Shown here: one piece after another, positions 2,331 to 52,499 of the stretch
How the letters are laid out: every line of letters starts with the position of its first letter
How positions within the stretch are numbered: the stretch's first letter is position 1
DNA from: Octopus sinensis
Taxonomy: Eukaryota
Length of the DNA: 64,000 nt
Direction of reading: 5' to 3'
Assembly (NCBI RefSeq): GCF_006345805.1
Contig: NC_042999.1
Span: 58,466,001-58,530,000 of the forward strand
Position numbers and translations under genes: made by a program
The notes under the pieces: generated by a model
Database searches by the model: none
Seen by the model: only the letters and a program-made list of their open reading frames with translations
What the model was told of the DNA's origin: nothing

Positions 2331-2468
2331 GTTATATATATATATGTGTATGTATATATATATAGCATACAGAAAATAGCACTACTACCAGTAGTCTAAC
2401 AATTGTCATTCCGTAATACTGACATAGCCGTACCTGCCTTTTGGGTCTTCTGGATACCAAACCCCCTC

Positions 2469-2859
<391 letters not shown>

Positions 2860-2899
2860 AGTATTACGGAAGGACCATTGTTAGACTTCCGGTAGTAGT

Positions 2900-10968: not shown

Positions 10969-11698
10969 CTCCTTTACTGATGAACGCGTTGGCCTTTGGA
11001 AGATTGACTTGATTAAGTTTAATTTAATTTAATCGGGCTGGTTTACCATTAAAAAACGCTGAAACAATGCATTGTCTAAAGAAGAATAGGGTAAATGATT
11101 TTTAAAAATTTTTCTCTGATTTCGGAATTACTACTATTTGCGGTTGGAGCCCTGGCTGCTGTTTCTAGTGGGTCGAACGGCCTATTATAGCCGTTCCTCA
11201 ATTGCTGTTGAATTTATTAATAGTCTCTGACTATTTCCTCTTTCTCACTAGACAGCTGGTGGCAAAATAATTTCTATTGAAATTTTTGCTACCCTAATAT
11301 TGATTAATTGATAATTTTCCGATTAATTCTGAAATTGAATCGGCAGTTTATATTTGCTGCCAATAAGTTGGCGCGAGTACGATGATTTTGAAAATTTTAG
11401 GTCAGATATTACCGAGGCATGAAGGTAGCTGCCTCGTGTAATTTCTGTCTCTTCTGGCTCCTTTACTGATGAACGCGTTGGCCTTTGGAAGATTGACTTG
11501 ATTAAGTTTAATTTAATTTAATCGGGCTGGCTTACCATTAAAAAACGCTGAAACAATGCATTGTCTAAAGAAGAACAGGGTAAATGTTTTTAAAAATTTT
11601 TCTCTGATTTCGGAATTACTACTATTTGCGGTTGGAGCCCTGGCTGCTGTTTCTAGTGGGTCAAACGCCCTATTATAGCCGTTCCTCAATTGTTGTTG
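10969..11698. repeat. ~240-bp direct repeat (10969-11210 and 11458-11698) with ~245-bp spacer
   Basis: ctcctttactgatgaacgcg...ccgttcctcaattg present twice, period 489, few substitutions; bounded by TA-rich tracts. Confidence 0.9.
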
Positions 11699-11736
<38 letters not shown>

Positions 11737-11817
11737 ATAATAAATATTAGGGAATAAATCCAAATTTACAGGGAAAAAATCAGATTTAGGATTAAATCCA
11801 ATTTTATAGTAAAATAT

Positions 11818-14800
11818 TATATAATATTATTAGAGACAAAACCACTATTTTGCAAAACAAACAAGGAAAGACTTAATCAATACATAAAATTTTAATAAAA
11901 AGTAAAAAAAAACCGCCACTACAATTGTTTCTTGTCCTGATCGACAATCTTCAGGTGGACTTCCAATCTAAAATATCAATATTTTAAAATATAAAAATAA
12001 TAATTTAAAATAATTAAAGTTTTAATGAATATAAATATATAATCTATATATAACCTATATATAATCCATATATAATCAATATATAAACTAAAATAAACCT
12101 ATTAACAATTAAATATAAAACAAAACAAAAAATAAACTATATATACACCCATACACATATAACTAATTATATATAACCATATCTAAATACATACACTAAA
12201 TCACACACCTATATATATATCCCTATACATACACATAAAAACGTCTAGGCAACGATAAATAAATAAAATAGCCAAATACTTCAACACAATACTTATTCAT
12301 ACTCCCTCACACACACATACAACCCACATTCCCGCTCTAGAAAACGAACATCATTTAAAATTATGAATGGAGAAATGGAATAAATGGAATTAAAAATTAT
12401 ATTCACTTGGTAAAACGAACATTACTAAAAATTATGAATGAAATAATGTAATAAAATAACAGACATCGTAAATAGACATAAATTACTACGAATTCTTAAT
12501 AAAAACTACCATGATAAACTAAAACTCATAAAAACATATAATGATAAAATCTCCCTTTACTAAACTCTATAACATACCTATATAGAAATCCCCCTAACCT
12601 AAACATTCACACACAAATACACACAAGTAAACCACACACCCACGACATATACAAATACCCACCTCACTCACACATACCTATACATACATATAAACCTCAA
12701 TATATACTCCAAAAACCACTCCCACCCCACACAGATAAATAAACACATACATCCCCAAACCTATATAGCAAACCCATAAACACATTCACACACAAATATA
12801 CATACGTAAAACACACACCATATACATATACATACTCACTAAACTCGATATATACAACAATATTAACACACCCACACTCATACAGATAAATAAATTATAC
12901 AACTAAAATACGCATACACTCACACACAATCCCCCATACATAAACACTCCAAAGAAAAACAACATTATTACACATAATACGATATATAAAATACATCGTA
13001 AGTAACCAGAATATCAAAAATAACAATATGACATAAGGAGAAATAATATAATACTTTCAAGTCAGTTTCAAATTATGAAGTGAAATTAAATTCTAAGCCG
13101 TTAAAAACGTCAAACCAAAATTACGTTACCATAGGAACCTAACATATGTATAAAAAGAATACGCGCTATGGAAGCAAACGTCATTTAAAATTATGAATGG
13201 AGAAATAGAATAAATGGAATTAAAAATTATATTCACGCGGTAAACTAACATTATTTTAAAAAATTATGAATGGATTCTTTAATAAAAACTACCATGATAA
13301 ATTAAAACTCATAAAAACATAAATGATAAAACCTCCCTTTACTAAACCCTATAACATACCTAGATAGCAATCCCTTTAACCTATACATTCACACACAAAT
13401 ACACACACGTAAACCACACACCCATAACAAATACAAATACCCACCTCATTCACACATACCTATAAGTACATATAAGCCTCGACATATACACCAAACAAAA
13501 TTACGTTACCAAGGAACCTAACATATGTATAAAAAGTATTCCCGCTCTGGAAACGAACATCTTTTAAAATTATGAATGGAGAAATGGAATAAATGGAATT
13601 AAAAATTATATTCACGTGGTAAAACGAACATTACTAAAAATTATGAATGAAATAATGTAATAAAATAACAAACATCGTAAATAGACAAATTACTACGAAT
13701 TCTTTAATAAAACTACCATGATAACTAAAACTCATAAAAACATATAATGATAAAATCTCCTTTGCTAAACTCTATAACAAACCTATATAGCAATCCCCCC
13801 AACCTAAACATTCACACACAAATACACACACGTAAACCACAGACCCACGACTTATACAAATACCCACCTCACTCACACATACCTATACTAACGTATAAAC
13901 CTCAATATACACCAAAAACCCACTCCCACCCCACACAGATAAATTAACACATACATCCCCAAACCTATATAAAAAAACCCATATACACATTCACACACAA
14001 ATATACATACGTAAAACACACACACACAACATATACATATACTCCCTCACATATACACATATACATACTCACTAAACTCGATATATACAACAATATTTAC
14101 ACACCCACACTCATACAGATAAATAAATTATACAACTAAAATACGCACATACTCACACACATTCCCACATACATAAACACTCCAAAGAAAAACAACATTA
14201 TTACACATAATACGATATATAAAAACCTCATAAGTAACCAGAATATCAAAAGTAACAATATGACATAAGAAGAAAAAATATACATACTTTCAAGTCAGTT
14301 TCAAATTATGAAGTGAAATTAAATTCTAAGCCGTTAAAAACGTCAAACCAAAATTACGTTACCATAGGAACCTAACATATGTATAAAAAGAATACGCGCT
14401 ATGGAAGCAAACGTCATTTAAAATTATGAATGGAGAAATAGAATAAATGGAATTAAAAATTATATTCACTCGGTAAACAAACATTACTTAAAAATTATGA
14501 ATGGAATAATGTAATATCATAAAAAGACATAAATTACTACGAATTCTTTAATCAAACTACCATGATAAATTAAAACTCATAAAAACATAAATGATAAAAC
14601 CTCCCTTTACTAAACTCTATAACATACCTATATAACAATCACTTTAACCTATACATTCACACACAGATACACACACGTAAAACACACACCCATAACAAAT
14701 ACAAATACCCACCTCATTCACACATACCTAAAATTACATATAAACCTCAACATATACACCAAAAAACCACTCCCACCCACACGGACAAATAAACACATAC

Positions 14801-15220
14801 ATCCCCAAAAATGGGCGCAATCCCACTCACACCAATCATACATATACAATTACACACACAAGAACAATACATAACTAACCCAAATATACAGAACATACCA
14901 CAAATCACCAACAAACCACCATGACAAATGAAACCCACACCCATACAATGACAAAACTCCCCCTCCATACCCAATTACACCCACATAGCAATCCCCATAT
15001 ATACATCCACCACAAACACACATACGCAAAACACACACACACAACACATACTTACAACCCCCCAAACACACCCATATACATACGTATCAAACTCGACATC
15101 CACAACAATACGCTCACACCCACTCACACCCAGATAAACAAACTACACAACCAAAAAACGCACACACACACGTGTGCGTATCTTAATTGTGCAATTCACC
15201 CATCCGCATGAATGCGGGCG
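11818..15220 (-). repeat. Left arm of giant inverted repeat (inverted copy of the PLE 3' region)
   Basis: Reverse complement of 18757-22153. Inner boundary ...ATGAATGCGGGCG(15220) vs (18757)CGCCCGCATTCAT. Differences seen are mostly 1-nt indels. Confidence 0.95.
11916..11958 (-). ncRNA. Type I minimal hammerhead ribozyme (left-arm copy)
   Basis: Reverse complement of the 22013-22055 motif. Confidence 0.85.
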
Positions 15221-17312
15221 ATGTTAAATTATATGATAAACTATTAGGGAAAGAAATAATTAAAAAATATAAAATTGTTCCAGATGATATTCTTTATAAT
15301 ATTAATAAGGCCTCTAAATTAGTAATGTTAAAATATGAGTTGGATAATAAAACTGAACCTTATGTACCTTTGCACCCCAGAATTACTCTTAAAGACCATA
15401 AAGATAATTTTTATTCAGACCCTAAAGTTAGATTAATTTGCCCATGTAAATCGGACCTAGGTAAATTAAGTAAATTTATTTTAGATAAATATATCGATAA
15501 GTTAAATAAACTTAATTATTTAAAATTATGGTTTAGTAATAAAAATACATTGAAATGGTTTAATAATATTAAAGATAAAAATCGTTATAAATTTATTCAA
15601 ATAGATATAGGTAATTATTATTCTTCTATTAATGAAATTGTGTTTAATAAAGCGCTTATTTTCGCAATGAATAAAGTGGGTATGTCACGTGAAGAAGTTA
15701 ATGTAATTAAAATGGCTAGGAAATCGCTAATTAAATATAAAAATAAATATGGGCTAGGAATGATACTAGAGATTGTTTTGATATACCTATGGGAGCACCA
15801 GATTCTGCACAGGCTACTGATTTAGTAGGTATTTTTCTTTTATCTGAACTCCAATTAGAAAATCTTAAGATAGAGGGTGGCTTATATAGAGACGATCTTC
15901 TACTAGTTACAAAGAATTGTACTAATAGGAATCTAGAAGTATATAAGAAAAAACTATATAGTTTCTTTAAAAGATATGGTTTAAGTATTACTATATATAA
16001 GGAGAATTATAATGTTAATTATTTAGATGTTAATTTTAATCTTATTACTGGTAAAACACAACCATATCATAAACTTAATGAGAACCTTAGATATATAAAT
16101 GTTAATAGTAATCACCCATTTTCTATTAAAAAATCGTTGATTAATAATATAAGTAAACGTATTTCATTACTCTCTTATGATATAGAGATTTTTAATAAAC
16201 ATGCTAATTATTATAATGAGGCCCTTAGAGGGGCAGGTTATAATAGGAATATTAAATTTTATAATATTAGTGATAAAGATTTAAATGATAATTTTCGAGA
16301 TACTTCTAATAATAATTATAATTTTGTTAGGTTTAGTGGTAAAAATAATAGATATTATAAAAATAATAATAAAAATGATAAAAATATAAATAAGAATAAA
16401 AATAATAATAATAATAATACAAATAAGAATAATAAAAATAAAAATAAATTTAATAATTATTATAATAATTATATTGATAAAATTAATAATATTAATAATT
16501 CCTTAAATGCTGTACATAGATATAATTCTGATAATAATTTTAATAAAATAAAGAATTATAAATATATTTATAATAATGATAATAATAATAAGGTTAATAA
16601 GAATAAAATTTGGTTAATAGTTCCTTATGGAGATCAAGTAAAAACGAATATTATTAAAGAGATTTTAGATGTTATAGAACTATTTATTAGAGATAATCGT
16701 AAATATAGAAACATTTTCTCTATTAATAATTTTGGAGTGGGTTATTCTACCACTAATAATGTAGGTAACATATTTCTTCATTTAATAAATATAAACTGAA
16801 TAATTTTTATAAAGAAATTATTTGATAATAATATTAATAATGATAAGACTTATATTAATTGTACATGTAGAGATAAATCTAATTGTATATTAAATAATAA
16901 TTGTGATATTAACGATGTAGTGTATAAATGTATAGTTACATTACATGATAATAACTTTAAGAATAATAATTACCCAAAAGCGGTTTATATAGGTTCTACT
17001 TCCTCAAAAATAAAATTAAGTATCGCACAACATATGAATTCTTTTAAAAATAAAAACTTAATCAACTCAACTGGACTTAGTAAGTACATTTGGAGTCCAA
17101 AATCACTAAATATTAATTATAGTTTAATTTGGGAAATAATTTGTAAAACTAAATCATATACTATAGGAGCTAATTGTTGTTATTTATGCTCTAATGAGTT
17201 TAAAGAAATTTTATTTTATAAGTATGATAATTTACTTAATACTGGTGAAGAGCGCAAAATAAAATGCAGACATAAGTTACTTTACCTATATAATAAGTTT
17301 CATGATAAATAG
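15221..17312 (+). pseudogene. PLE reverse transcriptase plus GIY-YIG endonuclease, 5'-truncated, with a frameshift near 15750 and an in-frame TGA at 16797
   Basis: ITLKDHK..F...PK.RLI, FIQIDIGNYYSSI (catalytic D at 15604), PMGAPDS, YRDD (15885-15896), YLDV; CxC linker CTCR (16860), VVYKC..YIGST (YIG 16986-16994), CCYLC, KCRH. Confidence 0.92.
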
Positions 17313-18756
17313 CATTAATAGTTCCCTATTAAGGTTACTTTAGTTTAGTTTAATTTAGTTTAGATAATTATATTTATTTGGTTATGTAGTCTAGGTTTTA
17401 ATTATAGTTAGTCTTTATTGATATTTCTTTGTTTTAATTAGTTCATTTTTAATGTATATTAATATAACAGTTTATGGTACGTTAAAACTTTAATAATTTA
17501 TATTAGATTTTTTATTTTCTTTAATTATATATTTTTTTATTTTTATTTTATTTTATTATGTATTTTTATTATGCATTTGTTATATGTATATTGGAGGATA
17601 TTTTTATATGGATGATGGGTGTTATTTAGTGGTGTATATATTGAGTTTTGTATGTGTGAATGTTTACGATCCCTTTGTTTTTTATTTGGTATGTTGAATT
17701 GACAGATTTTATTTGGGTATTGTCTGTTATAATAAAGTTTATATAGACATTTGGGTGATTGTCCGTGAATATGTAGGTATAGGTGTGTATGTATGTGTGC
17801 ATGTGTACAAATGTAAGTGTAGATGCGGGAGTGTATGAGTACTATGTAATTGAGTGGGATTATTTATGCACTTGTATATATGAATGTTATGAAAGTGCGT
17901 GTTGTTGCACCTGTCTGCGTGTACACACTTTTAAATATATTAATTTTTATTTACTTTTTTGAAAGACTGTTTCTTATATATATGAGTATGTGATGTTATG
18001 TGTGAATGTATTTTTATATATATATATTGTTTTTTTTAATTAAAAAAATTTTTTTTTATATACATATACATATACATACATATTTTTTAAATATTTTTTT
18101 ATATTGGTGCATATGTCGAGGTTTGTAAGTATGTATATGGTTTTTGGTGTATATATCGAGGTATATACGTATGTATAGGTTTGTGTGAGTGAGGTGGGTA
18201 TTTGTATTTGTGGGTGTGTGGTTTATGTGTGTGTATTTGTGTTTGAATGTATAGGTTAGGGGGATTGATATATAGGTTTGTTATAGAGTTTAGTAAATGG
18301 AGGTTTTATCATTATATGTATTTATGAGTTTTAGTTTATCTTGGTAGTTTTAATAAATAATTTGTAGTAATTTATGTCTATTTTTGATGTTTGTTATTTT
18401 ATTACATTTTCCATTCTTAATTTTAGGTAATGTTAGTTTACCACCTGGTTATAATTTTTAATTCCATTTTTTCCATTCATAATTTTAATGTCGTTTGTTT
18501 CCATAGTGCTACGTATGAGCCTCAATATATGCACCGGTGATTCGCTTCCACATCCGTGCGGATGGGTGAGAGTATGCATTGAGTGTAGTGATGGGGCTCC
18601 CTTTGCTATGCACGTTTGTACCTGTGTGGTAGTCTCCATGTGTACATTCGCGCACGGGTATACGTGCGGGGGGCATACGCGCACGGCATGTGCGTGTACC
18701 CCCTCACATGTACATGTGCATGCTTGTTGGGCTCGATATGTGCAACGGTGTGTTCG

Positions 18757-21700
18757 CGCCCGCATTCATGCGGATGGGTGAATTGCACAATTAAGATACG
18801 CACACGTGTGTGTGTGCGTTTTTTGGTTGTGTAGTTTGTTTATCTGGGTGTGAGTGGGTGTGAGCGTATTGTTGTGGATGTCGAGTTTGATACGTATGTA
18901 TATGGGTGTGTTTGGGGGGTTGTAAGTATGTGTTGTGTGTGTGTGTTTTGCGTATGTGTGTTTGTGTGTGGATGTATATATGGGGATTGCTATGTGGGTG
19001 TAATTGGGTATGGAGGGGGGAGTTTTGTCATTGTATGGGTGTGGGTTTCATTTGTCATGGTGGTTTGTTGGTGATTTGTGGTATGTTCTGTATATTTGGG
19101 TTAGTTATGTATTGTTCTTGTGTGTGTAATTGTATACATGTATGATTGGTGTGAGTGGGATTGCGCCCATTTTTGGGGATGTATGTGTTTATTTGTCCGT
19201 GTGGGGTGGGAGTGGTTTTTTGGTGTATATGTTGAGGTTTATATGTAATTTTAGGTATGTGTGAATGAGGTGGGTATTTGTATTTGTTATGGGTGTGTGT
19301 TTTACGTGTGTGTATCTGTGTGTGAATGTATAGGTTAAAGTGATTGTTATATAGGTATGTTATAGAGTTTAGTAAAGGGAGGTTTTATCATTTATGTTTT
19401 TATGAGTTTTAATTTATCATGGTAGTTTGATTAAAGAATTCGTAGTAATTTATGTCTTTTTATGATATTACATTATTCCATTCATAATTTTAAAGTAATG
19501 TTTGTTTACCGAGTGAATATAATTTTTAATTCCATTTATTCTATTTCTCCATTCATAATTTTAAATGACGTTTGCTTCCATAGCGCGTATTCTTTTTATA
19601 CATATGTTAGGTTCCTATGGTAACGTAATTTTGGTTTGACGTTTTTAACGGCTTAGAATTTAATTTCACTTCATAATTTGAAACTGACTTGAAAGTATGT
19701 ATATTTTTTCTTCTTATGTCTATTGTTACTTTTGATATTCTGGTTACTTATGAAGTTTTTTATATATCGTATTATTTGTAATAATGTTGTTTTTCTTTGG
19801 AGTGTTTATGTATGTGGGAATGTGTGTGAGTATGTGCGTATTTTAGTTGTATAATTTATTTATCTGTATGAGTGTGGGTGTGTAAATATTGTTGTATATC
19901 GAGTTTAGTGAGTATGTATATGTGTATATGTGAGGGAGTATATGTATATGTTGTGTGTGTGTGTTTTACGTATGTATATTTGTGTGTGAATGTGTATATG
20001 GGTTTTTTATTATAGGTTTGGGGATGTATGTGTAATTTATCTGTGTGGGGTGGGAGTGGGTTTTTGGTGTATATTGAGGTTTATACGTTAGTATAGGTAT
20101 GTGTGAGTGAGGTGGGTATTTGTATAAGTCGTGGGTCTGTGGTTTACGTGTGTGTATTTGTGTGTGAATGTTTAGGTTGGGGGGATTGCTATATAGGTTT
20201 GTTATAGAGTTTAGCAAAGGGAGATTTTATCATTATATGTTTTTATGAGTTTTAGTTATCATGGTAGTTTTATTAAAGAATTCGTAGTAATTTGTCTATT
20301 TACGATGTTTGTTATTTATTACATTATTCATTCATAATTTTTAAGTAATGTTCGTTTTACCACGTGAATATAATTTTTAATTCCATTTATTCCATTTCTC
20401 CATTCATAATTTTAAAAGATGTTCGTTTCCAGAGCGGGAATACTTTTTATACATATGTTAGGTTCCTTGTAACGTAATTTTGTTTGGTGTATATATTGAG
20501 GCTTATATGTACTTATAGGTATGTGTGAATGAGGTGGGTATTTGTATTTGTTATGGTGTGTGGTTTACGTGTGGTATTTGTGTGTGAATGTATAGGTTAA
20601 AGGGATTGCTATCTAGGTATGTTATAGGGTTTAGTAAAGGGAGGTTTTATCATTTATGTTTTTATGAGCTTTAATTTATCATGGTAGTTTTTATAAAGAA
20701 TCCATTCATAATTTTAAAATAATGTAGTTTACCGCGTGAATATATTTTTAATTCCATTTATTCTATTTCTCCATTCATAATTTTAAATGACGTTTGCTTC
20801 CATAGCGCGTATTCTTTTTATACATATGTTAGGTTCCTATGGTAACGTAATTTTGGTTTGACGTTTTTAACGGCTTAGAATTTAATTTCACTTCATAATT
20901 TGAAACTGACTTGAAAGTATGTATATTATTTCTCCTTATGTCATATTGTTATTTTTGATATTCTGGTTACTTACGATGTATTTTATATATCGTATTATGT
21001 GTAATAATGTTGTTTTTCTTTGGAGTGTTTATGTATGTGGGATTGTGTGTGAGTGTATGCGTATTTTAGTTGTATAATTTATTTATCTGTATGAGTGTGG
21101 GTGTGTTAATATTGTTGTATATATCGAGTTTAGTGAGTATGTATATGTATATGGTGTGTGTTTTACGTATGTATATTTGTGTGTGAATGTGTTTATGGGT
21201 TTGCTATATAGGTTTGGGGATGTATGTGTTTATTTATCTGTGTGGGGTTGAGTGGGTTTTTGGAGTATATATTGAAGGTTTATATGTATGTATAGGTATG
21301 TGTGAGTGAGGTGGGTATTGTATATGTCGTGGGTGTGTGGTTTACGTGTGTGTATTTGTGTGTGAATGTTTAGGTTAGGGGGATTGCTATATAGGTATGT
21401 TATAGAGTTTAGTAAAGGGAGATTTTATCATTATATGTTTTTATGAGTTTTAGTTTATCATGGTAGTTTTATTAAAGAATTCGTAGTAATTTATGTCTAT
21501 TTACGATGTCTGTTATTTTATTACATTATTTCATTCATAATTTTTAAGTAATGTTCGTTTTACCAAGTGAAATAATTTTTAATTCCATTTATTCCATTTC
21601 TCCATTCATAATTTTAAATGATGTTCGTTTTCTAGAGCGGGAATGTGGGTGTATGTGTGTGTGAGGGAGTATGAATAAGTATTGTGTTGAAGTATTTGGC

Positions 21701-22153
21701 TATTTTATTATTTATCGTTGCCTAGACGTTTTTATGTGTATGTATAGGGATATATATATAGGTGTGTGATTTAGTGTATGTATTTAGATATGGTTATATA
21801 TAATTAGTTATATGTGTATGGGTGTATATATAGTTTATTTTTTGTTTTGTTTTATATTTAATTGTTAATAGGTTTATTTTAGTTTATATATTGATTATAT
21901 ATGGATTATATATAGGTTATATATAGATTATATATTTATATTCATTAAAACTTTAATTATTTTAAAATTATTATTTTTATATTTTAAAATATTGATATTT
22001 TAGATTGGAAGTCCACCTGAAGATTGTCGATCAGGACAAGAAACAATTGTAGTGGCGGTTTTTTTATACTTTTTATTAAAATTTTATGTATTGATTAAGT
22101 CTTTCCTTGTTTGTTTTGCAAAATAGTGGTTTTGTCTCTAATAATATTATATA
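18757..22153 (+). repeat. Right arm of giant inverted repeat (distal PLE 3' region / pseudo-LTR)
   Basis: See left arm; G/T-rich; internal ~1.2-kb higher-order repeat. Confidence 0.95.
22013..22055 (+). ncRNA. Type I minimal hammerhead ribozyme at the PLE 3' end
   Basis: CCAC-CTGAAGA-TTGTC-gatcag-GACAA-GAAA-C-AATT-G-TA-GTGG. Confidence 0.88.
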
Positions 22154-22189
<36 letters not shown>

Positions 22190-22202
22190 TGTATGTATCT
22201 GC

Positions 22203-22964
22203 CTGCATCAGCGTCATGAAAAGGAGAGCCGAAATATAGAAGCTTGGGTTGTAGAAAATAACAAGTCATACCCTAAAGCTCATTTCACCTTTTCGGATAG
22301 ATTTGTGACTGGTGACGAAAAAATGGAACTTCTATAGAAATGTTAAACGTCGTAAACAGTGGCTTGGTAAAAGAGATAAAGCTCAACCACAACTGAGAAG
22401 GTAACTTCATGGGGAAAAGGTTCTTCTCTCTATCTGGTGGGATTGCAAGGGAGTAGTTCACTTTGAATTGTTACCACCTAATGCAACAATCAATGCTTAA
22501 GTCTACTGTCTGCAATTAGAGCGTTTGAATCAAACTTTGAAGAAAAAACAACCCGCTTTAGTGAATCGAAAAGGAGTGATGTTTCATCAGGACAATGCGC
22601 GACTCCACACTGCAAATATCACATCACAGAAAGTCGAAGAGCTTATTTGGGAAAAGATTTCTCATCCGCCTTATTCTCTCGACCTTGCTCTTCAGACTAC
22701 CATTTTTTCGTAGTTTACAGAATCATTTAGGGGACATAACTTTCGCGAGCCAGGAGGGGGTCGAAAGTGATATTTCAGAGTTATTTGCTTTGAAATCAAA
22801 AGAGTTTTACATTAATGGGATTAAAAAGCTTGTAAATAGATGGAAGGAAGTCATAGATAATCAGGGAAAGCACATTGATGATTAAATTTCAATTAAATAT
22901 AAAATTTGATCACTTGTTTTCTATTTTCAAAATTCGAACAGAATTTATGGGATGACCATAAATA
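22203..22964 (+). mobile_element. mariner (DD34D) transposase remnant, 5'-truncated, with 3' TIR
   Basis: FVTGDEK, MFHQDNAR, HPPYS.DLA, FRSLQNHL, RWKEVIDNQG across frameshifts; terminus ...CAGAATTTATGGGATGACCATAAATA. Confidence 0.9.
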
Positions 22965-35390: not shown

Positions 35391-36640
35391 CCTATTTCCA
35401 TGTCTTATACTTGCTCAGTTTTTGGTAGGACTTGACAGATACAGTTATGTCGATTGGGACAGTCACATCAATGCGGAAGCATGATTTCTGTCTGACGTCT
35501 TTCAATATAATGTCTGGCCTATTCGCATCTATCTTACTGTCAGTTTGAATGGTGAAGTTCCAGAGGAATGAGATGTGATAATTTTCAAGAACTGGAGATG
35601 GTTTGTGTTCCCACTAGTTTTTAACATGGGAGAGGTCTAGGATTTTGCAAATTACCCAATGAATATATTGTACTGCTCTATCTTGCCTGTTGAGATATTC
35701 TGTAGACGCAAGAAGGCTGCACATGGAGACAACATTATCAATGGTTTCATTTTGTTGTTGACATACACGAAATGTTGGGCTACTGCCGCTCTTTAATATG
35801 TTGGCCTGGTAGTTCCATGTAGGTAGGCATTGATCTTGGGCTGGTATGATAAACCGTTTTGTTTCTGATTTTAAGCCAGAAGATACTAACCATTTATGGG
35901 TAAGGGCTTTGTCAACATCAGCATTATTAGCTCTCTTTGGGTATTTTGCCATTAAGAGTTTTTTCTTGCCATTTATCAGTAAAAATGTCTAACGCAGCAA
36001 TTTTAGCACAGGTTTTCTTACGCTTAGCTTTTTCGGTGCTTGTTTCTAGTACGTCTAATTCTGGAATTTGTTGTATTTGGAATTCACTTAGATATTCCTT
36101 TGCCTGTTTTGTTACTGAGAGTATGATGCTTTCTTTCTTTCAAGCTTTGAGACAAGTTTTAACATCCAGTACTCAGAGTTTTTGAGGTAGGTGTCTAGGT
36201 CAACTGTGGCAATCTTCATTGTTAATTCCAGTTGTAAAAGTTCACGGCCTCCTTCTTTTCTTGACAGGTAAAGTTGTTCTTTATCTGCCTTAAGGTGGTG
36301 CATTCTATACATTGTCAACAATTTTCGTATTTTTCTGCCAAGATTACATATTTCAGTAATTAACCAGTTAATGATATTGAAACTGTAAGTCACGACTGGT
36401 ATGGCTAAAGTATTGGTCGCTTCGATTCTGTTTCTTGCATTCATCTCTGTCTTGAGTATTGTCCTTACCCTGCGATAACATTCTCTTCTGATCCTTTTCC
36501 TCACCACTGAATGTTTGATTCTGTCTCCTTCAAATACCCCTAGGTATTTGTAGCTCTCCGTTGGTTCTAACTCCTTTATAACGTTTTGTACTCCAGGTAT
36601 GGTACAGATTGATCCACAGATTTGAGCGTGTATTGAGGAC
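35390..36640 (-). mobile_element. R4/Dong-like LINE remnant 2
   Basis: ESYKYLG...NTLAIPVVTYSF, LKSET..FI..AQDQ, zinc-knuckle region RVCQQQNETIDNVVSMC, ANRPD..IDVTVP..KLSKYK. Confidence 0.85.
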
Positions 36641-36735
36641 ACACACATAGACAGGGTATTTTATATATTAAGATATATATACAATTATACAATTATACAT
36701 ACATACATACATACATACATACATACATACATACA

Positions 36736-38323
36736 TTATGGCTGCCCCCTCGTTATCGAGTATGGCCATTGCACGAAGCTTAACTGTTACTGGTGCTGTG
36801 ATCGAATGTGACTTTTTAGCCCAGCTAAAGATCTACAATGTCTTGTACAAAATTGGCAACTAAAACCTTTACTGGTAATAGCCGGCTGTAGTTTTAATTG
36901 GGCTTCATGTACCTTTGCATGTCGTTTAAGCCCTCCTGCCGAATTACACACTCTTCGACATGCCCGACAGATATGATTAGTATGGTGTGTTACACCACCA
37001 CCAGTGGCCAGGTTGTCACTCATCTGTCTCGTTTTACGACTACGAAGATGACTCATGAGTCCAGCTCTACTGAGGCAGGGTCTTGCACAGACATTGCATG
37101 TCAGAATCAAAGGAAGACCCTTCCCTTCTGGAAGTGTAACAGCAATGCCCTTCCTGACATCCCTCCTTACTTTCTCATGTGGAACTCGAGATTTCTCAAA
37201 CGTGGCTGTCCCCTCATGCACAATCCTTCTCCACCTGCTACGATCAATAGCTATACCTTCCCATGTGTCAGGAGAGATGCAAGCATCTCTTAAGGAAGCC
37301 CTCAGCAATACCTTATACCTCTTTTTTGGTTTATGTGGAGGTCGTTCTCCTTTAGCTAACTCTCCATAAAAGAGTTGTTTAGGCATCCTTGAATCCTTCA
37401 TTCTGACCAGATGACCACTCCATCTGAGCCTTTGCTTTAACACAAGTGCTTCTATACTTTCACACCGAGAGCCTTCGAGTATTTCAAGATCACTGATGCG
37501 GTCCTTCTACTTAATGCCATAGATCTGTCTGAGGCACATCTGATGGAAACGTTCCAGTTGTTTAAGGTGGTATCGATATGTGACCCACGTCTCGCAGGCA
37601 TAGAGAAGAGGAGGGTGCACACATGCCTTGTACACCTTTATCTTTGTCTTTCTGCATATGTCTCGCCGACTCCAGAGGCGCTTTTCTAGCCTTCCGAAAG
37701 CAACACTTGCTTTCCTAATTCTATATGGAATTTCATCATCCACATTGCCATATCTATTAATAGTGCTTCCCAGGTAGACAAACTGATCGACTACATCAAG
37801 TCGTTTACCATTCACATAGATATTTGGTACATTATACTGCCTACCAGGGGCAGGTTGATGCATGACAACAGTTTTCTTGAGATTGATTGTCAATTCTAAA
37901 GCAGTGCAAGCATCAGAGAATGCATTCAAAATGTGTTGCATATCAATCTCTGTGTGTGCTACTAGCTCACATCATCAGCATACAAAAGGTCTCTTATGAT
38001 AGAGGTAAATATCTTTGTTTTTGCAGCAAGGCGCCTGATATTAAATATGCTGCCAGAGGTTCGATAATGGACGTAAACACCGTATCTGCAGTTTCTGAAT
38101 GCAATACAGAACACCATCGCGAAATATATGGAAAATAGGGTCGGTGCCAGAATATCCCCCTGTTTCACTCCATTTTGTATTGAAATGGGCTCCGACATCT
38201 TCCCTCTAACATTCACCCTACCATTCATGTCTTCATGAAAAGACCTAACCAAAGCAAGGAACTTTTCAGGACACCCAAATTTCTGGAGGACTTTCCACAA
38301 AGCTTTTCTATTGACGGTATCGT
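36736..38323 (-). mobile_element. RTE-clade LINE, 5'-truncated, with three C-terminal C2H2-like fingers
   Basis: YDTVNR, GVKQGDILAPTLF, LLYADD, YLGS, RLRWSGH, PKQLFYGEL; 1-nt frameshift near 37965 and TGG>TAG at 37507; (TGTA)n tail. Confidence 0.95.
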
Positions 38324-38392
38324 ACATACATACATACATACATACATACATACATACATACATACATACATACATACATACATACATGCATA

Positions 38393-38459
<67 letters not shown>

Positions 38460-48502: not shown

Positions 48503-49229
48503 TATATATATATATATTTGTGTGTGCGTGTATGTGTGTTTGTCTTGCACCAACACTTGACAACCAATGGGTTCGGCAAAAGAAACCGATAAAATAAGTA
48601 CTAGGCTTAAAAAAAAAGTACCGGGGTAGATTCGTTTGACTAAAAGCTCTTCAAGGCTGAAACAAGTAAAAGATAAAACATATCCTCCTAATTCGTGGTC
48701 TTTTATTTTGTACTGTACACTAAAGGCGGCGAATTGGCCGAGTGTGTTCCGTATTGGACGCTAGGGAATTAGCAAGGTGTGTCCGTGTCTTGGTGGCGCG
48801 CGGAGTAGGTAAAGCAATATATGTAATGTCTGGTAGTATTTGCTCTACTTCTCCGCTGAGTTTAAATCCCACCAAGATAAAACAGGTTTGCTTGTAATGC
48901 TTCTGAAGTTGATAAATAAAATATCCGTCAAGTGCTGGCGTCACTTTATTCACTCTCCTTCTCTCCTCGTCCATTTCTCTCTATCTTTTGAAACCCTCAT
49001 AACTGATTACATAACTGATCTCAGCCGACAAATAGTGTCTTCGAAACAAAAACAAAAAAACAAACAAACAAAAAATAAAACAAACCAAAACAAAAAAACA
49101 TTAAATTGAAAAGAAAGATAACGCCATCGAAGGAAGGTATTCTCTCACGGTAATTTCATGACAAACACAGTGATTGTCTTTAAAGTCACAAGGGTTGTTC
49201 GTTGACCAGATAACGTAATGAATGAATGA

Positions 49230-49246
49230 ATGAATAATAATAATAA

Positions 49247-49291
<45 letters not shown>

Positions 49292-49325
49292 TATGATGAT
49301 AATGATAATAATAATAATAATGATG

Positions 49326-49372
<47 letters not shown>

Positions 49373-49388
49373 GATAATGATGATGATG

Positions 49389-49434
<46 letters not shown>

Positions 49435-49448
49435 TGATGATGATGATG

Positions 49449-49480
<32 letters not shown>

Positions 49481-49636
49481 TATGATGATAATAATAATAA
49501 TTATGATGATAATAATAATGATAATGATGATAATGATAATAATAATAATGATGATGATGATAATAATAATAATAATGATGATGATGATAATAATAATGAT
49601 GATGATGATATAATAATAATAATAATAATAATAATT

Positions 49637-49671
<35 letters not shown>

Positions 49672-49672
49672 A
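49230..49672. repeat. ~440-bp interrupted (ATA)n/(ATG)n microsatellite
   Basis: Direct reading. Confidence 0.95.
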
Positions 49673-52499
49673 AAACAAAAATGCAAAGGAAAACACATGA
49701 AGATTTCAAATAAATTGGAAGCAGGTTTTTTTTTACTCCAATAACGTAATCTAGTGTTTGGTAACACCAACAGAACGAATCAAATAATTCTAAATCATCT
49801 GATATTGTTCTTTTCTAAATAATCAGAAATGTATTTTTTCTGTTCTTTACACATTGCGCTAATGGGAATAAACGGAACAACATGACAAGTTTGGTGAGGT
49901 GGATGTATGTCATAACTCAATTTTAGCTGATAAAACTTTGATTTTTATGCTTTAGAATTGTAATAAATCATTAGACAGTCACAAAATCGTTTGCAGCTAA
50001 TTAATAATCATTCATTTTATTTTAGGCATATATAGTCTGATATCAATAGATCGCTTCTGTTTTTGATGTTATTGCTGTTGTTTAGCCTTAAATCAACTCA
50101 GATCGAATAAATATTTGATCAAAAGCATTCCAGCCATGACCTCCCCGTCTTTCTGTTTATCTAAGGCTGGGTCGTTCAATGCATACTTCATCCTCTTTTT
50201 GAGTCGGCGAATTGGGTGGGTTGTTAGAACGTCGTACAGAATATTTTGTATTATTTGTTTCAACTGTCTGTGCACTGAGCTCAAATCCTGTCTAGGCCAA
50301 CTCTGGCATTTATTTATTTTTTTCCCGAAGTAGATAAAGAAAGTATCAAGCCAGGCAGTAAATTAGCAGAATTGGTAGAGCGTCGGACGAAATGCTTTGT
50401 GACATCTCTTCCGATACTTTGCGTTCTAGATTAAATCTCATATTAGGTGCCAATGGCCACAGCTAATCACCAGACTATTGTCCAATTCACAAGCAGCATG
50501 GGCATATAGTCCGGCCGACAACTTATATAGACAGACCTATAATAACATTAAGAATCTGGAATGTTAAGTCTGTTAATGGATGATGCGAGACAACGCCATA
50601 ACATGTAATGCGTTCAGATTGATTAAAATTGGCAATTGATTTGGTTCCACTTGATTGGTTTATGAAATGACAATGACAAAAAGAAAACAAAATGAATAAA
50701 GGGGGTAAGATTTGACTGCTACTTCCAGTAGGCGAGGCTGCCATGTAGACGCCTCCTTACTGGCTCGTCAGTACAATGTTAGAACGCTGAGCTGAAAGAT
50801 GACACATTATTGAATAGCGATTAGTCATTCTGACTATCACATAACATTTGGATTTTTGCGTTATACACTAGGATGATCTAACAATTACAAATAATTTAAT
50901 TTTTGTACGTGTGAATACATAAGTCTTGAAAGTCGCTTGATCTGCTTCATATTAACAAGATGTTAATAAATGATGCAAGAGAACGCCTTAGCATGTAATA
51001 TGCTCAGATGGATGAAAGAAGGCTTTGATTCGGTTCCAATTGACTTGTTCATCAAAATACTGTAATTTCACAAAATTGAGAGCATCACGATGAGAGCGTC
51101 ACCAAAATACTTGCATGGAATTTCTTAGGAGATAGTGCTGCTGGTTTTCCCTGTGCCCTATAATTATTGCTCATGAGTTAACCAATAAAAGAAATCCAAT
51201 TTAATGAATGGAATTAGAAAGATCCAAGCTCATCTACTACCGTCTTCTCACGGACGGCCTAAGCATATTTGCTGTAAATGGTTCTGCGATTCAAAAGAGT
51301 CTCATTATTATCAATCAGTTTTGAAAAAAAACATTAAATATGTCGTTAATGTATTATTCATTCGGTACATCACTTCGTTTTCAGTTTGATTCCTTTCTTC
51401 TATCAGGGCATCGTAATTGCTTTCCCCTTTCTATTTTGAAACGAATGTAACTAATTAATGTTCAAAGTTCGAAAGATCTAGATTAGCAAGAAGCCGCCAA
51501 TTCCCACACTAGCTAATTTACCATAGCTACCAGTCATAGAAAATCTATCTACACTTTGTTGCGAAAGGAAGTCAGGGAAGCTATCTTTTCTTCATACCAT
51601 AACTGACATTCAGTTTAATTCAACAAGTTAGCAATCTATGGACACTGACTGAGTGCATGGAAAACTGTTCTGTTGTTCTTTCCTCCTAGAAGAGATCGGA
51701 CAGACGGTACTGTTGAAATTATAGAGTTTATCTCGAATCCGCAATGCCTTTCAGTAGCACTATTACGGTGAAAGATTTCAGGAAATTAACCATAAGCACC
51801 TGATAAAAACCCTAGAAAAAGATCGTTCCATACATTCTCCTCTCGTCGGTACCCAGAATACCTTCATCCAAACGTCATTACGGATATACTGGAATAACCT
51901 ATAAAATACAGAGGCTTACCTTCAACTGACTACATTTGCCAAAAATTCTTTGAAATTTAGGCACGACTCCAGCATTTGACTAATATTTTATTTTACAACC
52001 CAGGAAGGATGAAAGGCAAATTTGACTTCGCAGGATTTAAAATTAGAAAGTAAGAAATCCGAAGAATTATCGCAAGGCCGCTTCTATCAAACATCTACCA
52101 TAGCTCCATGCTTTACACAGATTTTCCACATTTTGTGTTGAAACCGAGTGCATTTAAAGGTGCACGTAAGAGTTTTCTGAGTTTGCCATGGTGAAAGTAC
52201 CCAAACCATCGCCTTCAGGGTGTCGGCTGTTTTAGGGAATCGGTGTTTTTGTTTTTGGTGCCGTCACCACTATGGCGAATATCTCCTACCGTTCACCCAG
52301 TGCAAGAAGCTACTGGAAATATGGCAATGTGAAAGGAAATAAATTAGCTAATTCAGAATTGCCTTTTATTCTCATTCAGGGAAAAAAATTTTAAGCACTT
52401 TCTACCCTTCACTGGAATAAGGGCAAATGAAAAACACCACAGCCACGATGATGATGATGATGATGATGATGATGATAATAAAAACAACAAAAACAATAA

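What the first reader, a model, noticed from the sequence alone, without database searches (positions are those of the whole stretch)
11741..22153. Giant Penelope-like element whose RT-endonuclease ORF is enclosed by 3.4-kb inverted arms, each ending in a hammerhead
Seen: arms 11818-15220 and 18757-22153 are near-identical reverse complements around a 3536-bp core holding the RT and GIY-YIG frame. The left arm truncates the ORF at 15221. Known: PLEs form 5'-truncated insertions capped by an inverted pseudo-LTR, carry hammerheads and favour microsatellites; C-terminal-EN elements with a CxC linker and KCRH end fit the Hydra clade (Craig et al. 2021, from memory). Unusual: pseudo-LTRs I know are a few hundred bp, whereas here ~4.8 kb lies 3' of the stop codon and 3.4 kb of it is duplicated. 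Inference: a possibly undescribed long-UTR PLE lineage (full unit over 7 kb). Read-through transcription would give a 3.4-kb dsRNA hairpin with ribozyme-trimmable ends, a potential small-RNA or ADAR substrate.
Basis: partly seen in the sequence, partly recalled or inferred. Interest (0 to 1): 0.92.

Follow-up and report, generated by a model that had tools for sequence, protein, structure and literature searches.

The report
Head-to-head octopus Penelope-like retrotransposon insertion
This is a dead, doubly truncated insertion of a Hydra-clade Penelope-like retrotransposon in an octopus-type genome; its 3.4-kb inverted arms are the known head-to-head insertion pattern of these elements, made large only by an unusually long, repeat-filled 3' untranslated region.

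Summary
Arms 11818-15220 and 18757-22153 are reverse complements (98.6% over 3.4 kb) around a 3536-bp core. The core carries a 5'-truncated reverse transcriptase / GIY-YIG endonuclease frame. A hammerhead motif lies about 100 nt inside each outer end.

The protein is a Penelope-like element (PLE) of the Hydra clade. It has the CxCX5C linker and CxxC...CxH around the endonuclease E and N, and it sits in (TA)n. Its closest relatives are octopod proteins (56-59% identity) and a 90.6%-identical Octopus vulgaris copy.

The arms are not giant pseudo-LTRs. They are two 5'-truncated copies joined head to head, with a one-sided 77-bp "tail". This layout is already described for PLEs, and it recurs in this family with about 125-bp arms in O. 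vulgaris. It fits priming of reverse transcription from both cut target strands.

The unusual part is the 4.8-kb 3' UTR, 3.5 kb of it an array of ~0.4-kb GT-rich modules. Hydra elements are usually under 3 kb. I could not test whether this UTR is a family trait. The idea of two ribozyme-trimmable ends fails, because only one hammerhead is sense on any one transcript. Interest is low to moderate.

The parts
11703..11740 (.). Left target microsatellite, (TA)n then (ATA)n, at the end of a SINE-like repeat.
   Evidence: Sequence read. Window 11600-11747 matches L004 14337-14490 at 81%, so the flank is itself a dispersed repeat.
11741..11817 (-). The 'tail': a ~77-bp family-specific extension found only at the left end of the insertion. 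Its left boundary is uncertain by about 6 nt because it merges into (ATA)n.
   Evidence: The tail occurs only three times in the window plus four octopod loci, always next to a PLE end: 11735-11817, 2563-2640 (97.5%) and L004 7970-7903 (92.8%). A one-sided tail is a described PLE feature.
11818..15220 (-). Inverted 5'-truncated copy: the last 3.40 kb of the element's 3' UTR (the left arm).
   Evidence: Its outer end coincides with the element's 3' terminus (...GGTTTTGTCTCTAATAATATTATAT), which the solo copy shares.
11920..11954 (-). Hammerhead ribozyme motif of the inverted copy.
15204..15217 (.). Short palindrome CCGCATGAATGCGG, 3 nt from the head-to-head junction at 15220|15221.
   Evidence: Read. 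Any role in the junction is speculation.
15221..22153 (+). Direct 5'-truncated copy, 6.93 kb: ORF remnant plus the complete 3' UTR. The right arm is 18757-22153.
15221..17312 (+). ORF remnant. It lacks about 130 N-terminal residues.
- RT motifs: ITLKDHK, FIQIDIGNYY, MGAPDSAQ, YRDD.
- Thumb region.
- N-rich low-complexity insert (~16300-16600).
- Linker CxCX5C (Cys codons at 16860, 16866, 16884).
- GIY-YIG endonuclease (~16917-17312, ending ...KCRH...).
The frame is broken by three small deletions, near 15748, 16771 and 16812.
17313..22153 (+). 3' UTR, 4.84 kb. The sense strand is C-poor (5-8% C).
18139..21650 (+). Array of GT-rich modules. Five ~0.4-kb 'A' modules start at 18139, 19213, 20059, 20483 and 21255, interleaved with 'B' modules at 18806, 19826 and 21049. 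A 1224-bp higher-order repeat (19477-20441 / 20701-21644) is 92% identical.
   Evidence: The modules differ from each other by 8-17%, while the arms differ by at most 1.4%, so the array predates the insertion.
22017..22051 (+). Hammerhead ribozyme motif of the direct copy. The predicted cut is after GUA at 22051, 102 nt from the 3' end.
   Evidence: It meets the cuganga-N7-17-gaaa descriptor of Craig 2021.
22154..22200 (.). Right target microsatellite, (TA)n then (TATG)n.
2563..2806 (+). Separate small insertion of a sister subfamily in another (TA)n. It consists of the tail (2563-2640) plus the last ~165 bp of the element (2642-2806, 86% identical), with its own hammerhead at 2661-2696.

Best explanation
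One integration event of a Hydra-clade Penelope-like retrotransposon into a (TA)n microsatellite of an octopod genome. I infer that the element's GIY-YIG endonuclease cut both target strands and that each free 3' end primed reverse transcription near the 3' end of element RNA.

One cDNA started at the distal start site and so includes the 77-bp tail. It stopped after 3.40 kb and became the inverted left copy. The other cDNA started at the proximal site and stopped after 6.93 kb, inside the RT coding region. It became the direct right copy. The two incomplete cDNAs were joined head to head at 15220|15221.

The inverted 'arms' are therefore just the part of the element that both copies contain. 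They are long because this element's RNA carried a 4.8-kb 3' UTR holding a 3.5-kb array of ~0.4-kb GT-rich modules that had expanded before this insertion.

The copy cannot move by itself. It has no promoter-bearing 5' part, it lacks about 130 N-terminal residues, and three small deletions break the frame.

Shown: the anatomy, the protein family, the recurrence of the layout, and that the array is older than the insertion. Inferred: dual-strand priming and the two start sites (by analogy with the Anolis Poseidon element), and hammerhead activity.
For: 1. Anatomy: arms, core and junction are as described.
2. Clean termini: the left arm ends exactly at the element's 3' terminus, followed by the tail and then (ATA)n(TA)n. 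The right arm ends at the same terminus, followed by (TA)n(TATG)n.
3. Recurrence of the layout [(TA)n][tail][inverted truncated copy][direct truncated copy]:
- in O. vulgaris locus L004 7991-7640, with ~125-bp arms;
- in the window at 2563-2806, as tail plus a 165-bp direct copy;
- the tail occurs only at such ends.
4. Literature:
- An inverted 5'-truncated copy next to the 5' end and a 30-40-bp tail at one end only are described as typical PLE features (PMC8557442).
- Purified Poseidon protein cleaves and extends both target strands and starts reverse transcription at two adjacent internal sites that bracket the tail (PMC11167929).
5. Protein identity:
- 3055 homologues at E <= 1e-3, the best from Octopus bimaculoides, O. 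sinensis and Argonauta hians.
- 24 relatives of at least 650 aa carry DKT (never DKG), RWK/R, YRDD, CxCX5C and CxxC..E..N..CxH. These are the Hydra diagnostics.
- GIY-YIG Pfam hit in relative P0213.
6. Array age: modules are 83-92% alike while the arms are 98.6% alike, so the array was already in the template.
7. Hammerhead: 3 motifs against 0.01 expected by chance. Between the two subfamilies, helix II keeps pairing through a U-A to A-U swap while every core nucleotide is retained.
Against: - No read-level data, so the assembly of a 3.4-kb inverted repeat cannot be verified.
- The arm differences are dominated by 1-bp indels (31 against 13 substitutions). That looks more like unpolished long-read consensus than evolution, so assembly quality is imperfect here.
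- Dual-strand priming has been shown only for an Anolis Poseidon element in vitro, not for a Hydra-clade element.
- Rfam finds no hammerhead, and the monomer minimum-energy fold does not form it.
- No second copy links the RT to the long UTR. The O. vulgaris coding copy diverges shortly after the stop codon.
- Placement in Hydra rests on motifs and nearest neighbours, not on a tree with reference sequences.
Confidence: 0.8

Rival explanations
1. Assembly artefact: a fold-back or chimeric long read, or a mis-join, created an inverted duplication of one ordinary 5'-truncated insertion.
For: The arms differ mainly by 1-bp indels, the error type of long-read consensus. PLE tandem and inverted structures are said to trouble assemblies. 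No reads are available here.
Against: A fold-back artefact would break at an arbitrary point and carry flanking DNA into the palindrome. Here the left arm stops exactly at the element's 3' terminus, is followed by the family-specific tail and a (TA)n target, and the two flanks are different sequences. The same tail / inverted copy / direct copy layout exists in an independent assembly of O. vulgaris.
Confidence: 0.07
2. Two separate insertions: a second copy of the same family later landed in inverted orientation exactly at the 5' end of an older truncated copy.
For: The family targets AT-rich or (TA)n DNA and could revisit a site. Inverted neighbours can arise this way for any abundant element.
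Against: No target microsatellite or other spacer lies between the two copies at 15220|15221. The arms are 98.6% identical, with only 13 substitutions in 3.4 kb. By contrast, another copy in the same window differs by 14%. The layout recurs at small scale.
Confidence: 0.05
3. The long 3' region is not the native UTR of this RT. The template was a chimera, for example a template switch onto a non-autonomous partner RNA that shares the family's 3' end and tail, or a satellite captured once. The 'long-UTR lineage' would then be a single accident.
For: - The only other coding copy found (O. vulgaris, 90.6% identical, open frame) shares only a few tens of bases after the stop codon.
- No other copy of 17350-21650 occurs in the rest of the window or in 108 kb from four octopod genomes.
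- Related elements are short: the Argonauta unit is 3754 bp, and Hydra elements are usually under 3 kb.
- PLE-dependent non-autonomous repeats (retrozymes) exist.
Against: - The O. vulgaris copy has no family 3' terminus within 15 kb downstream, so it is simply broken there and says nothing about the native UTR.
- ORF, proximal UTR, array and terminus share the same unusual C-poor sense-strand composition: 8.5%, 5.7%, 7.9% and 4.6% C against 17-18% in the flanks. This argues for long co-residence on one RNA.
- PLE length increase by internal tandem repeats is documented.
Confidence: 0.25
4. Post-insertion DNA rearrangement: a replication template switch or palindrome formation at the short hairpin CCGCATGAATGCGG duplicated the 3' part of a single insertion in inverted orientation.
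For: A 14-nt palindrome sits 3 nt from the junction.
Against: Such a duplication would not end precisely at the element terminus, and it would not add a family-specific tail next to a (TA)n.
Confidence: 0.03

Closest known systems
Hydra clade of C-terminal-endonuclease Penelope-like elements (Craig, Yushenova, Rodriguez & Arkhipova 2021, PMC8557442)
   Same: C-terminal GIY-YIG endonuclease, CxCX5C linker, CxxC and CxH around the conserved E and N, no CCHH finger, hammerhead motif, (TA)n target, aquatic invertebrate host (Mollusca is listed among the host phyla). Full-length relatives carry RWK/R and DKT.
   Different: Hydra elements are described as generally under 3 kb. This copy is already 6.93 kb without its 5' end, because of a 4.8-kb 3' UTR. 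It also has an N-rich low-complexity insert in the ORF and a coding region of only 21% GC.
Canonical PLE insertion architecture (Penelope of Drosophila virilis; Poseidon PAc of Anolis carolinensis, PMC11167929)
   Same: 5' truncation, an inverted 5'-truncated copy at the upstream end, and a tail at one end only. Cleavage and extension of both target strands, together with two reverse-transcription start sites, explain both features.
   Different: The tail here is ~77 bp rather than 30-40 bp. No direct pseudo-LTR is present at this locus. The clade is different, and the mechanism has not been tested for Hydra elements.
Chlamys-clade PLEs lengthened by tandem repeats
   Same: PLE units of 3.3-8.2 kb whose length is increased by internal tandem repeats.
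   Different: Chlamys elements have an N-terminal endonuclease, live in green algae, plants and protists, and target (CA)n.
Related octopod element in Argonauta hians (locus L003)
   Same: 51% identity in the RT, the same domain order and linker, and insertion into (TA)n.
   Different: A compact 3754-bp unit with 932-bp direct pseudo-LTRs that are 99.9% identical. It has no inverted copy, a 1.3-kb 3' UTR, and a sense strand that is not C-poor.
L1 twin-priming inversions (Ostertag & Kazazian 2001; cited from my own knowledge)
   Same: Both DNA ends at the target prime cDNA synthesis, giving head-to-head segments in a single insertion.
   Different: In twin priming the second primer anneals internally, so the two segments do not overlap and no inverted repeat results. 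Here both segments start at the element's 3' end and overlap by 3.4 kb.
Metazoan type-I hammerheads of PLEs and non-LTR retrozymes (Cervera & de la Pena 2014, PMC4209133; Li et al. 2026 preprint)
   Same: Conserved core, helix I of 4 bp, helix III of 2 bp (including 15.1-16.1) capped by a 4-nt palindromic loop, together reading as the 6-nt palindrome CAAUUG, location in the terminal repeat region.
   Different: The 10.1-11.1 pair is U-A or A-U rather than the usual G-C. Activity is untested. The internal UTR modules carry no hammerhead core, so the array is not a retrozyme array.

Membership tests
Penelope-like elements (PLE) | Reverse transcriptase of the PLE type with catalytic motifs A (D) and C (YxDD). 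| tested here: met
   FIQIDIGNYY and YRDD are present. 3055 homologues, the best at E = 9.5e-48. The relatives share the whole N-terminal, RT and thumb layout. Pfam RVT_1 does not hit either the window ORFs or the relatives. The PDB profile search gives only a marginal retron RT match, E = 0.2.
Penelope-like elements (PLE) | GIY-YIG endonuclease fused to the RT. | tested here: met
   All invariant residues of the relatives' C-terminal domain are kept: VYK..., YIG, K, H, W-I, E, N. Pfam GIY-YIG PF01541 is above cutoff in relative P0213 and weak in P0004. The window piece alone gets no Pfam hit.
Penelope-like elements (PLE) | Insertion architecture: 5' truncation, inverted or direct partial copies, one-sided tail. 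| tested here: met
   compared with the description.
Penelope-like elements (PLE) | Hammerhead ribozyme motif in the terminal repeat. | tested here: inconclusive
   For the motif: it is complete and far above chance, and it shows one compensatory pair change. Against: Rfam does not recognise it and the monomer fold does not form it. Cleavage was not tested.
Hydra clade | Linker Zn-finger modified to CxCX5C. | tested here: met
   CTCRDKSNC is translated from 16860-16886. The motif is invariant in alignment A2 and matches the strict pattern in 14 of 24 long relatives.
Hydra clade | [quoted passage not shown] | tested here: met
   The sequence reads CYLCSNE ... LLN ... KCRH. No CCHH pattern lies between the GIY and the E.
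Hydra clade | N-terminal RWK motif, and DKG changed to DKT. | not testable with these tools
   The copy is truncated about 8 residues after the DKT position. Long relatives have DKT and RWK/R, and none has DKG.
Hydra clade | Insertion into (TA)n. | tested here: met
   (TA)n lies on both sides of the large insertion, the solo copy, the O. vulgaris mini pair and the Argonauta relative.
Hydra clade | Short element, generally under 3 kb. | tested here: not met
   The direct copy is 6933 bp even though it is 5'-truncated. This is a typical property rather than a defining one.
Hydra clade | Groups with reference Hydra RTs in a phylogeny and apart from Neptune, Nematis, Penelope/Poseidon and Naiad. 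| not tested
Indirect support only: the neighbours include Apostichopus japonicus proteins, a species named as a Hydra host.
   No direct repeat flanks the ORF here. The upstream repeat is an inverted truncated copy. Compare the true 932-bp direct pLTRs in Argonauta.

The most novel reading that the evidence does not exclude
Octopods may host an undescribed long-UTR sublineage of Hydra-clade PLEs, with a full unit above 7.3 kb. In this reading the RNA carries, as a stable and co-mobilised feature, a multi-kilobase array of ~0.4-kb GT-rich modules. The element also uses an unusually long (~77 nt) tail that is more conserved than the neighbouring terminus: 97.5% against 86% identity between subfamilies. 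That difference would point to the tail as the cis signal recognised by the RT-endonuclease. Head-to-head insertions of such elements would seed kilobase-scale inverted repeats in a genome known for heavy A-to-I editing.
Probability: 0.35. Interest if true: 0.4.

Novelty: new member of a known kind. Interest (0 to 1): 0.27.

Why it matters
PLEs are among the least understood retrotransposons, and they make up about 6.8% of the Octopus vulgaris genome. This locus is a clean, young example. It shows the tail, the inverted copy and the direct copy at nucleotide resolution for the Hydra clade, where the integration mechanism has not been studied.

If the long repeat-bearing UTR proves to be a family trait, the known size range of Hydra elements would more than double. 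It would also give a natural source of kilobase inverted repeats. Otherwise the locus is an ordinary dead transposon copy. The practical lesson is that long inverted repeats around a truncated RT in invertebrate genomes should first be read as PLE head-to-head insertions.

Tried and rejected
- Pfam on the three window ORFs: nothing. Pfam on eight relatives: only GIY-YIG in two.
- Rfam at gathering score on the whole window, at E <= 10 on 11600-22400, and on a 101-nt slice: no hammerhead family.
- Monomer minimum-energy folds of the two hammerhead variants: no better than shuffles.
- Word-indexed protein search with the endonuclease piece: no hits in the allowed length range. With the N-terminal piece: five distant hits only.
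- Exact-product look-up of the 336-aa ORF: not on record, so the source assembly could not be named.
- Metagenome scan with an 18-mer from the hammerhead: 11 hits, none with a CUGANGA upstream, so all are chance.
- Search for further copies of the 3' UTR in the rest of the window and in four octopod loci (108 kb), including a permissive blastn: only low-complexity matches plus the solo terminus.
- Search for hammerhead cores inside the UTR modules, to test a retrozyme-like array: none.
- tRNA scan of 11-23 kb: none.
- PDB profile search: only marginal retron RT matches.
- O. bimaculoides copy 1 as a measure of UTR length: its downstream region is an assembly gap, 84% N, so I dropped it.
- ADAR-like bias among the arm mismatches: not seen, only 1 A>G and 1 G>A among 13.
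- My guess that the ORF at 22595-22885 is a mariner remnant: no Pfam support.

Full report
**1. The observation**

The window is AT-rich (about 35% GC), microsatellite-rich animal DNA. The repeat finder gives the innermost inverted pair as 15011-15220 / 18757-18966, with 3536 nt between the arms, and the outermost pair as 11818-12023 / 21948-22153. One colinear blastn alignment joins the whole of both arms: 98.6% identity over 3422 columns. A global alignment counts 13 substitutions and 31 indel events, almost all of 1 bp and often in short homopolymers. Arm homology stops exactly at 15220|15221.

**2. The protein**

Pfam does not recognise the three ORFs in the core. Translation shows one frame running from 15223 to about 15750. 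After a 1-nt shift, a second frame runs from about 15768 to the stop at 17310-17312, interrupted by one in-frame stop at 16797.

The stretch 15768-16310 was scored by phmmer against 1.84 billion representative proteins:
- 3055 hits at E <= 1e-3 and 920 at E <= 1e-10.
- The best hits are Octopus bimaculoides XP_052826861 (56-59% identity), O. sinensis XP_029653623 and Argonauta hians GAB1597860.
- Near-full-length relatives are 700-800 aa. The query region aligns at about residue 315 of these, so the window copy lacks about 130 N-terminal residues.

The relatives carry RWK/R, DKT (never DKG), YRDD, a CxCX5C linker, and CxxC..E..N..CxH at the C-terminus. One relative has a Pfam GIY-YIG hit above cutoff. 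The window piece 16800-17309 keeps every invariant residue of that linker and endonuclease, including CTCRDKSNC, CYLC and KCRH.

These are the features by which Craig et al. 2021 defined the Hydra clade, together with canonical hammerheads and insertion into (TA)n (PMC8557442). The host is therefore an octopod, and the element is a Hydra-type PLE. PLEs are abundant in octopus: 6.8% of the O. vulgaris genome in 190 families (PMC13282606).

**3. State of the copy**

An O. vulgaris copy (L004 26723-28369) is 90.6% identical to window 15630-17311. It is open from its own 5' truncation to the stop codon. Against it, the window ORF has three frame-breaking deletions, of 1, 1 and 2 nt, near 15748, 16771 and 16812. 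All other ORF indels are multiples of three and lie in an N-rich low-complexity insert.

The in-frame stop lies in the short out-of-frame stretch between the second and third deletions. Small indels also dominate the differences between the arms, so some of these breaks may be consensus errors of a long-read assembly. That is an inference. Either way, the copy is 5'-truncated and cannot be autonomous.

**4. The ends, the tail and the target**

The right copy ends ...GGTTTTGTCTCTAATAATATTATAT at 22153 and runs into (TA)n(TATG)n. The left arm ends at the same terminus at 11818. It is followed outward by a 77-bp sequence (11741-11817) and then by (ATA)n(TA)n.

A third, independent insertion lies at 2563-2806. 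It has the same 77-bp sequence (97.5% identical), directly followed by the last 165 bp of the element in direct orientation (86% identical), inside another (TA)n.

In O. vulgaris, L004 7991-7640 read on the minus strand shows (TA)n, the tail (92.8% identical), an inverted copy of the last ~125 bp, and a direct copy of the last ~125 bp. The tail occurs nowhere else in the window or in the four octopod loci.

The layout [(TA)n][tail][inverted truncated copy][direct truncated copy] is therefore a recurrent product of this family. Only the length of the copies varies.

**5. How this compares with what is known**

Craig et al. 2021 state that PLE insertions are highly 5'-truncated. [quoted passage not shown]

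A 2024 in vitro study of the Anolis Poseidon element gives two further facts. The protein cleaves and extends both target strands, unlike R2 and L1. Reverse transcription starts at two adjacent internal sites, and the sequence between them is the tail (PMC11167929).

Applied here, one strand primed at the distal site (tail included) and gave 3.40 kb. The other primed at the proximal site and gave 6.93 kb. The two cDNAs were then joined head to head.

There is no direct partial-tandem repeat at this locus. The Argonauta relative, by contrast, has true 932-bp direct pLTRs, 99.9% identical, around a 3754-bp unit.

**6. Hammerheads**

A structure-aware scan required:
- CUGANGA;
- helix II of at least 4 bp;
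- GAAA;
- a paired helix III;
- UH;
- helix I of at least 3 bp.

It finds exactly three sites in the window: 22017 (+), 11954 (-) and 2661 (+). The expectation is 0.01 per window from 200 dinucleotide shuffles.

Between the two subfamilies every core nucleotide is kept. The pair closing helix II swaps U-A for A-U, and N7 and loop 2 change. Helix III is the 6-nt palindrome CAAUUG, and helix I has 4 bp. This is the metazoan type-I architecture, which is thought to work only as a dimer (PMC4209133).

Three further motifs of the same build, with other helix sequences, occur in the 108 kb of octopod loci. Rfam does not report any of the window motifs, and the monomer fold is no better than shuffles. 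The call therefore rests on the motif, and activity is unproven.

The motifs lie about 100 nt inside the arm ends. Because the two copies are on opposite strands, a read-through transcript would contain only one sense hammerhead. The idea of two ribozyme-trimmed ends does not hold.

**7. The long 3' UTR**

After the stop codon come 4841 nt, in three parts:
- 17313-18138 is T-rich.
- 18139-21650 is an array. Five ~0.4-kb modules are interleaved with a second module type, and a 1224-bp higher-order repeat is 92% identical.
- 21651-22153 is the terminal region with the hammerhead.

Module copies differ by 8-17%, while the arms differ by at most 1.4%. The array therefore existed in the RNA template before this insertion. 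There is no hammerhead core inside the array and no tRNA.

The sense strand of the ORF, proximal UTR, array and terminus is uniformly C-poor: 8.5, 5.7, 7.9 and 4.6% C, against 17-18% in the flanks. The O. vulgaris copy shares this composition in its ORF, but the related families do not. This argues that the parts have travelled together for some time.

I could not show linkage in a second copy. The O. vulgaris coding copy loses homology a few tens of bases after the stop codon and has no family terminus in the 15 kb that follow, so it is broken there.

Hydra elements are described as generally under 3 kb. Chlamys PLEs reach 8.2 kb, partly through tandem repeats. A unit above 7.3 kb is unusual for the clade but not for PLEs.

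**8. Rivals**

An assembly fold-back is unlikely because of three points:
- the exact terminus, tail and (TA)n at the left end;
- the two different flanks;
- the independent O. vulgaris example of the same layout.
It cannot be excluded without reads.

Two separate insertions, or a later DNA-level palindrome, fit the clean junction and the tail less well. A one-off chimeric UTR remains a real possibility; I put it at about 0.25.

**9. Verdict**

The identification as a Hydra-clade PLE in a microsatellite, with hammerhead motifs and a truncated ORF, is supported.

The striking inverted arms are explained by the known head-to-head insertion mode of PLEs and are not a new structure. The only point beyond the literature is the long, module-bearing 3' UTR, and to a lesser degree the 77-nt conserved tail. 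Whether these are general to the family is untested.

I file it as a new member of a known kind, of low to moderate interest.

Noticed in passing
window 2410-2872: The small tail-plus-165-bp PLE insertion sits in a long (TA)n. That (TA)n is itself flanked by inverted 14-mers, CCGTAATACTGACA on the left and TGTCAGTATTACGG on the right. This may be a MITE-like or fold-back repeat with a central (TA)n that served as the PLE target.
   Followed up: no
window 16300-16600; proteins P0001, P0002: The ORF has an N/K-rich low-complexity insert between the RT thumb and the linker. The Octopus relatives have one too. This is probably why RefSeq names them 'GATA zinc finger domain-containing protein 14-like' and 'uncharacterized protein DDB_G0282133': they are mis-named PLE fragments.
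   Followed up: partly
window 15221-22153; L004 26723-28369: The sense strand is extremely C-poor (5-9% C; coding GC 21%) in this family. The O. vulgaris copy shares this, but related octopod families (15-25% C) do not. The cause is unknown; it could be a mutational bias or a past editing or deamination episode.
   Followed up: partly
L004 10001-33618 (O. vulgaris gene model P0163): The annotated 233-aa 'hypothetical predicted protein' spans 23.6 kb. It splices a fragment of this PLE's thumb region onto unrelated exons, so it looks like a chimeric gene model built on repeats.
   Followed up: no
window 11818-15220 vs 18757-22153: The differences between the arms are 31 mostly 1-bp indels against 13 substitutions. 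This ratio is typical of unpolished long-read consensus in a duplicated region. It suggests the true arms may be nearly identical and the insertion very young.
   Followed up: partly
window 15204-15217: A 14-nt palindrome, CCGCATGAATGCGG, lies 3 nt from the head-to-head junction. It might mark where the shorter cDNA stopped.
   Followed up: no
window 36100-38430 (- strand): A degenerate LINE: one ORF fragment has an RVT_1 domain (37962-38429) and another carries C2H2 zinc fingers (36787-37443). It is unrelated to the PLE.
   Followed up: partly
L001 4101, L003 1772, L004 41747: Three more hammerhead motifs with the same build (6- or 4-nt palindromic helix III) but different helix sequences occur in the octopod loci. 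Such ribozyme motifs appear to be common in octopod genomes.
   Followed up: no
window 49145-49700: A ~550-bp run of ATT/ATA-type trinucleotide repeat reads as poly-isoleucine in two frames. It is the lowest-GC kilobase of the window (22%).
   Followed up: no
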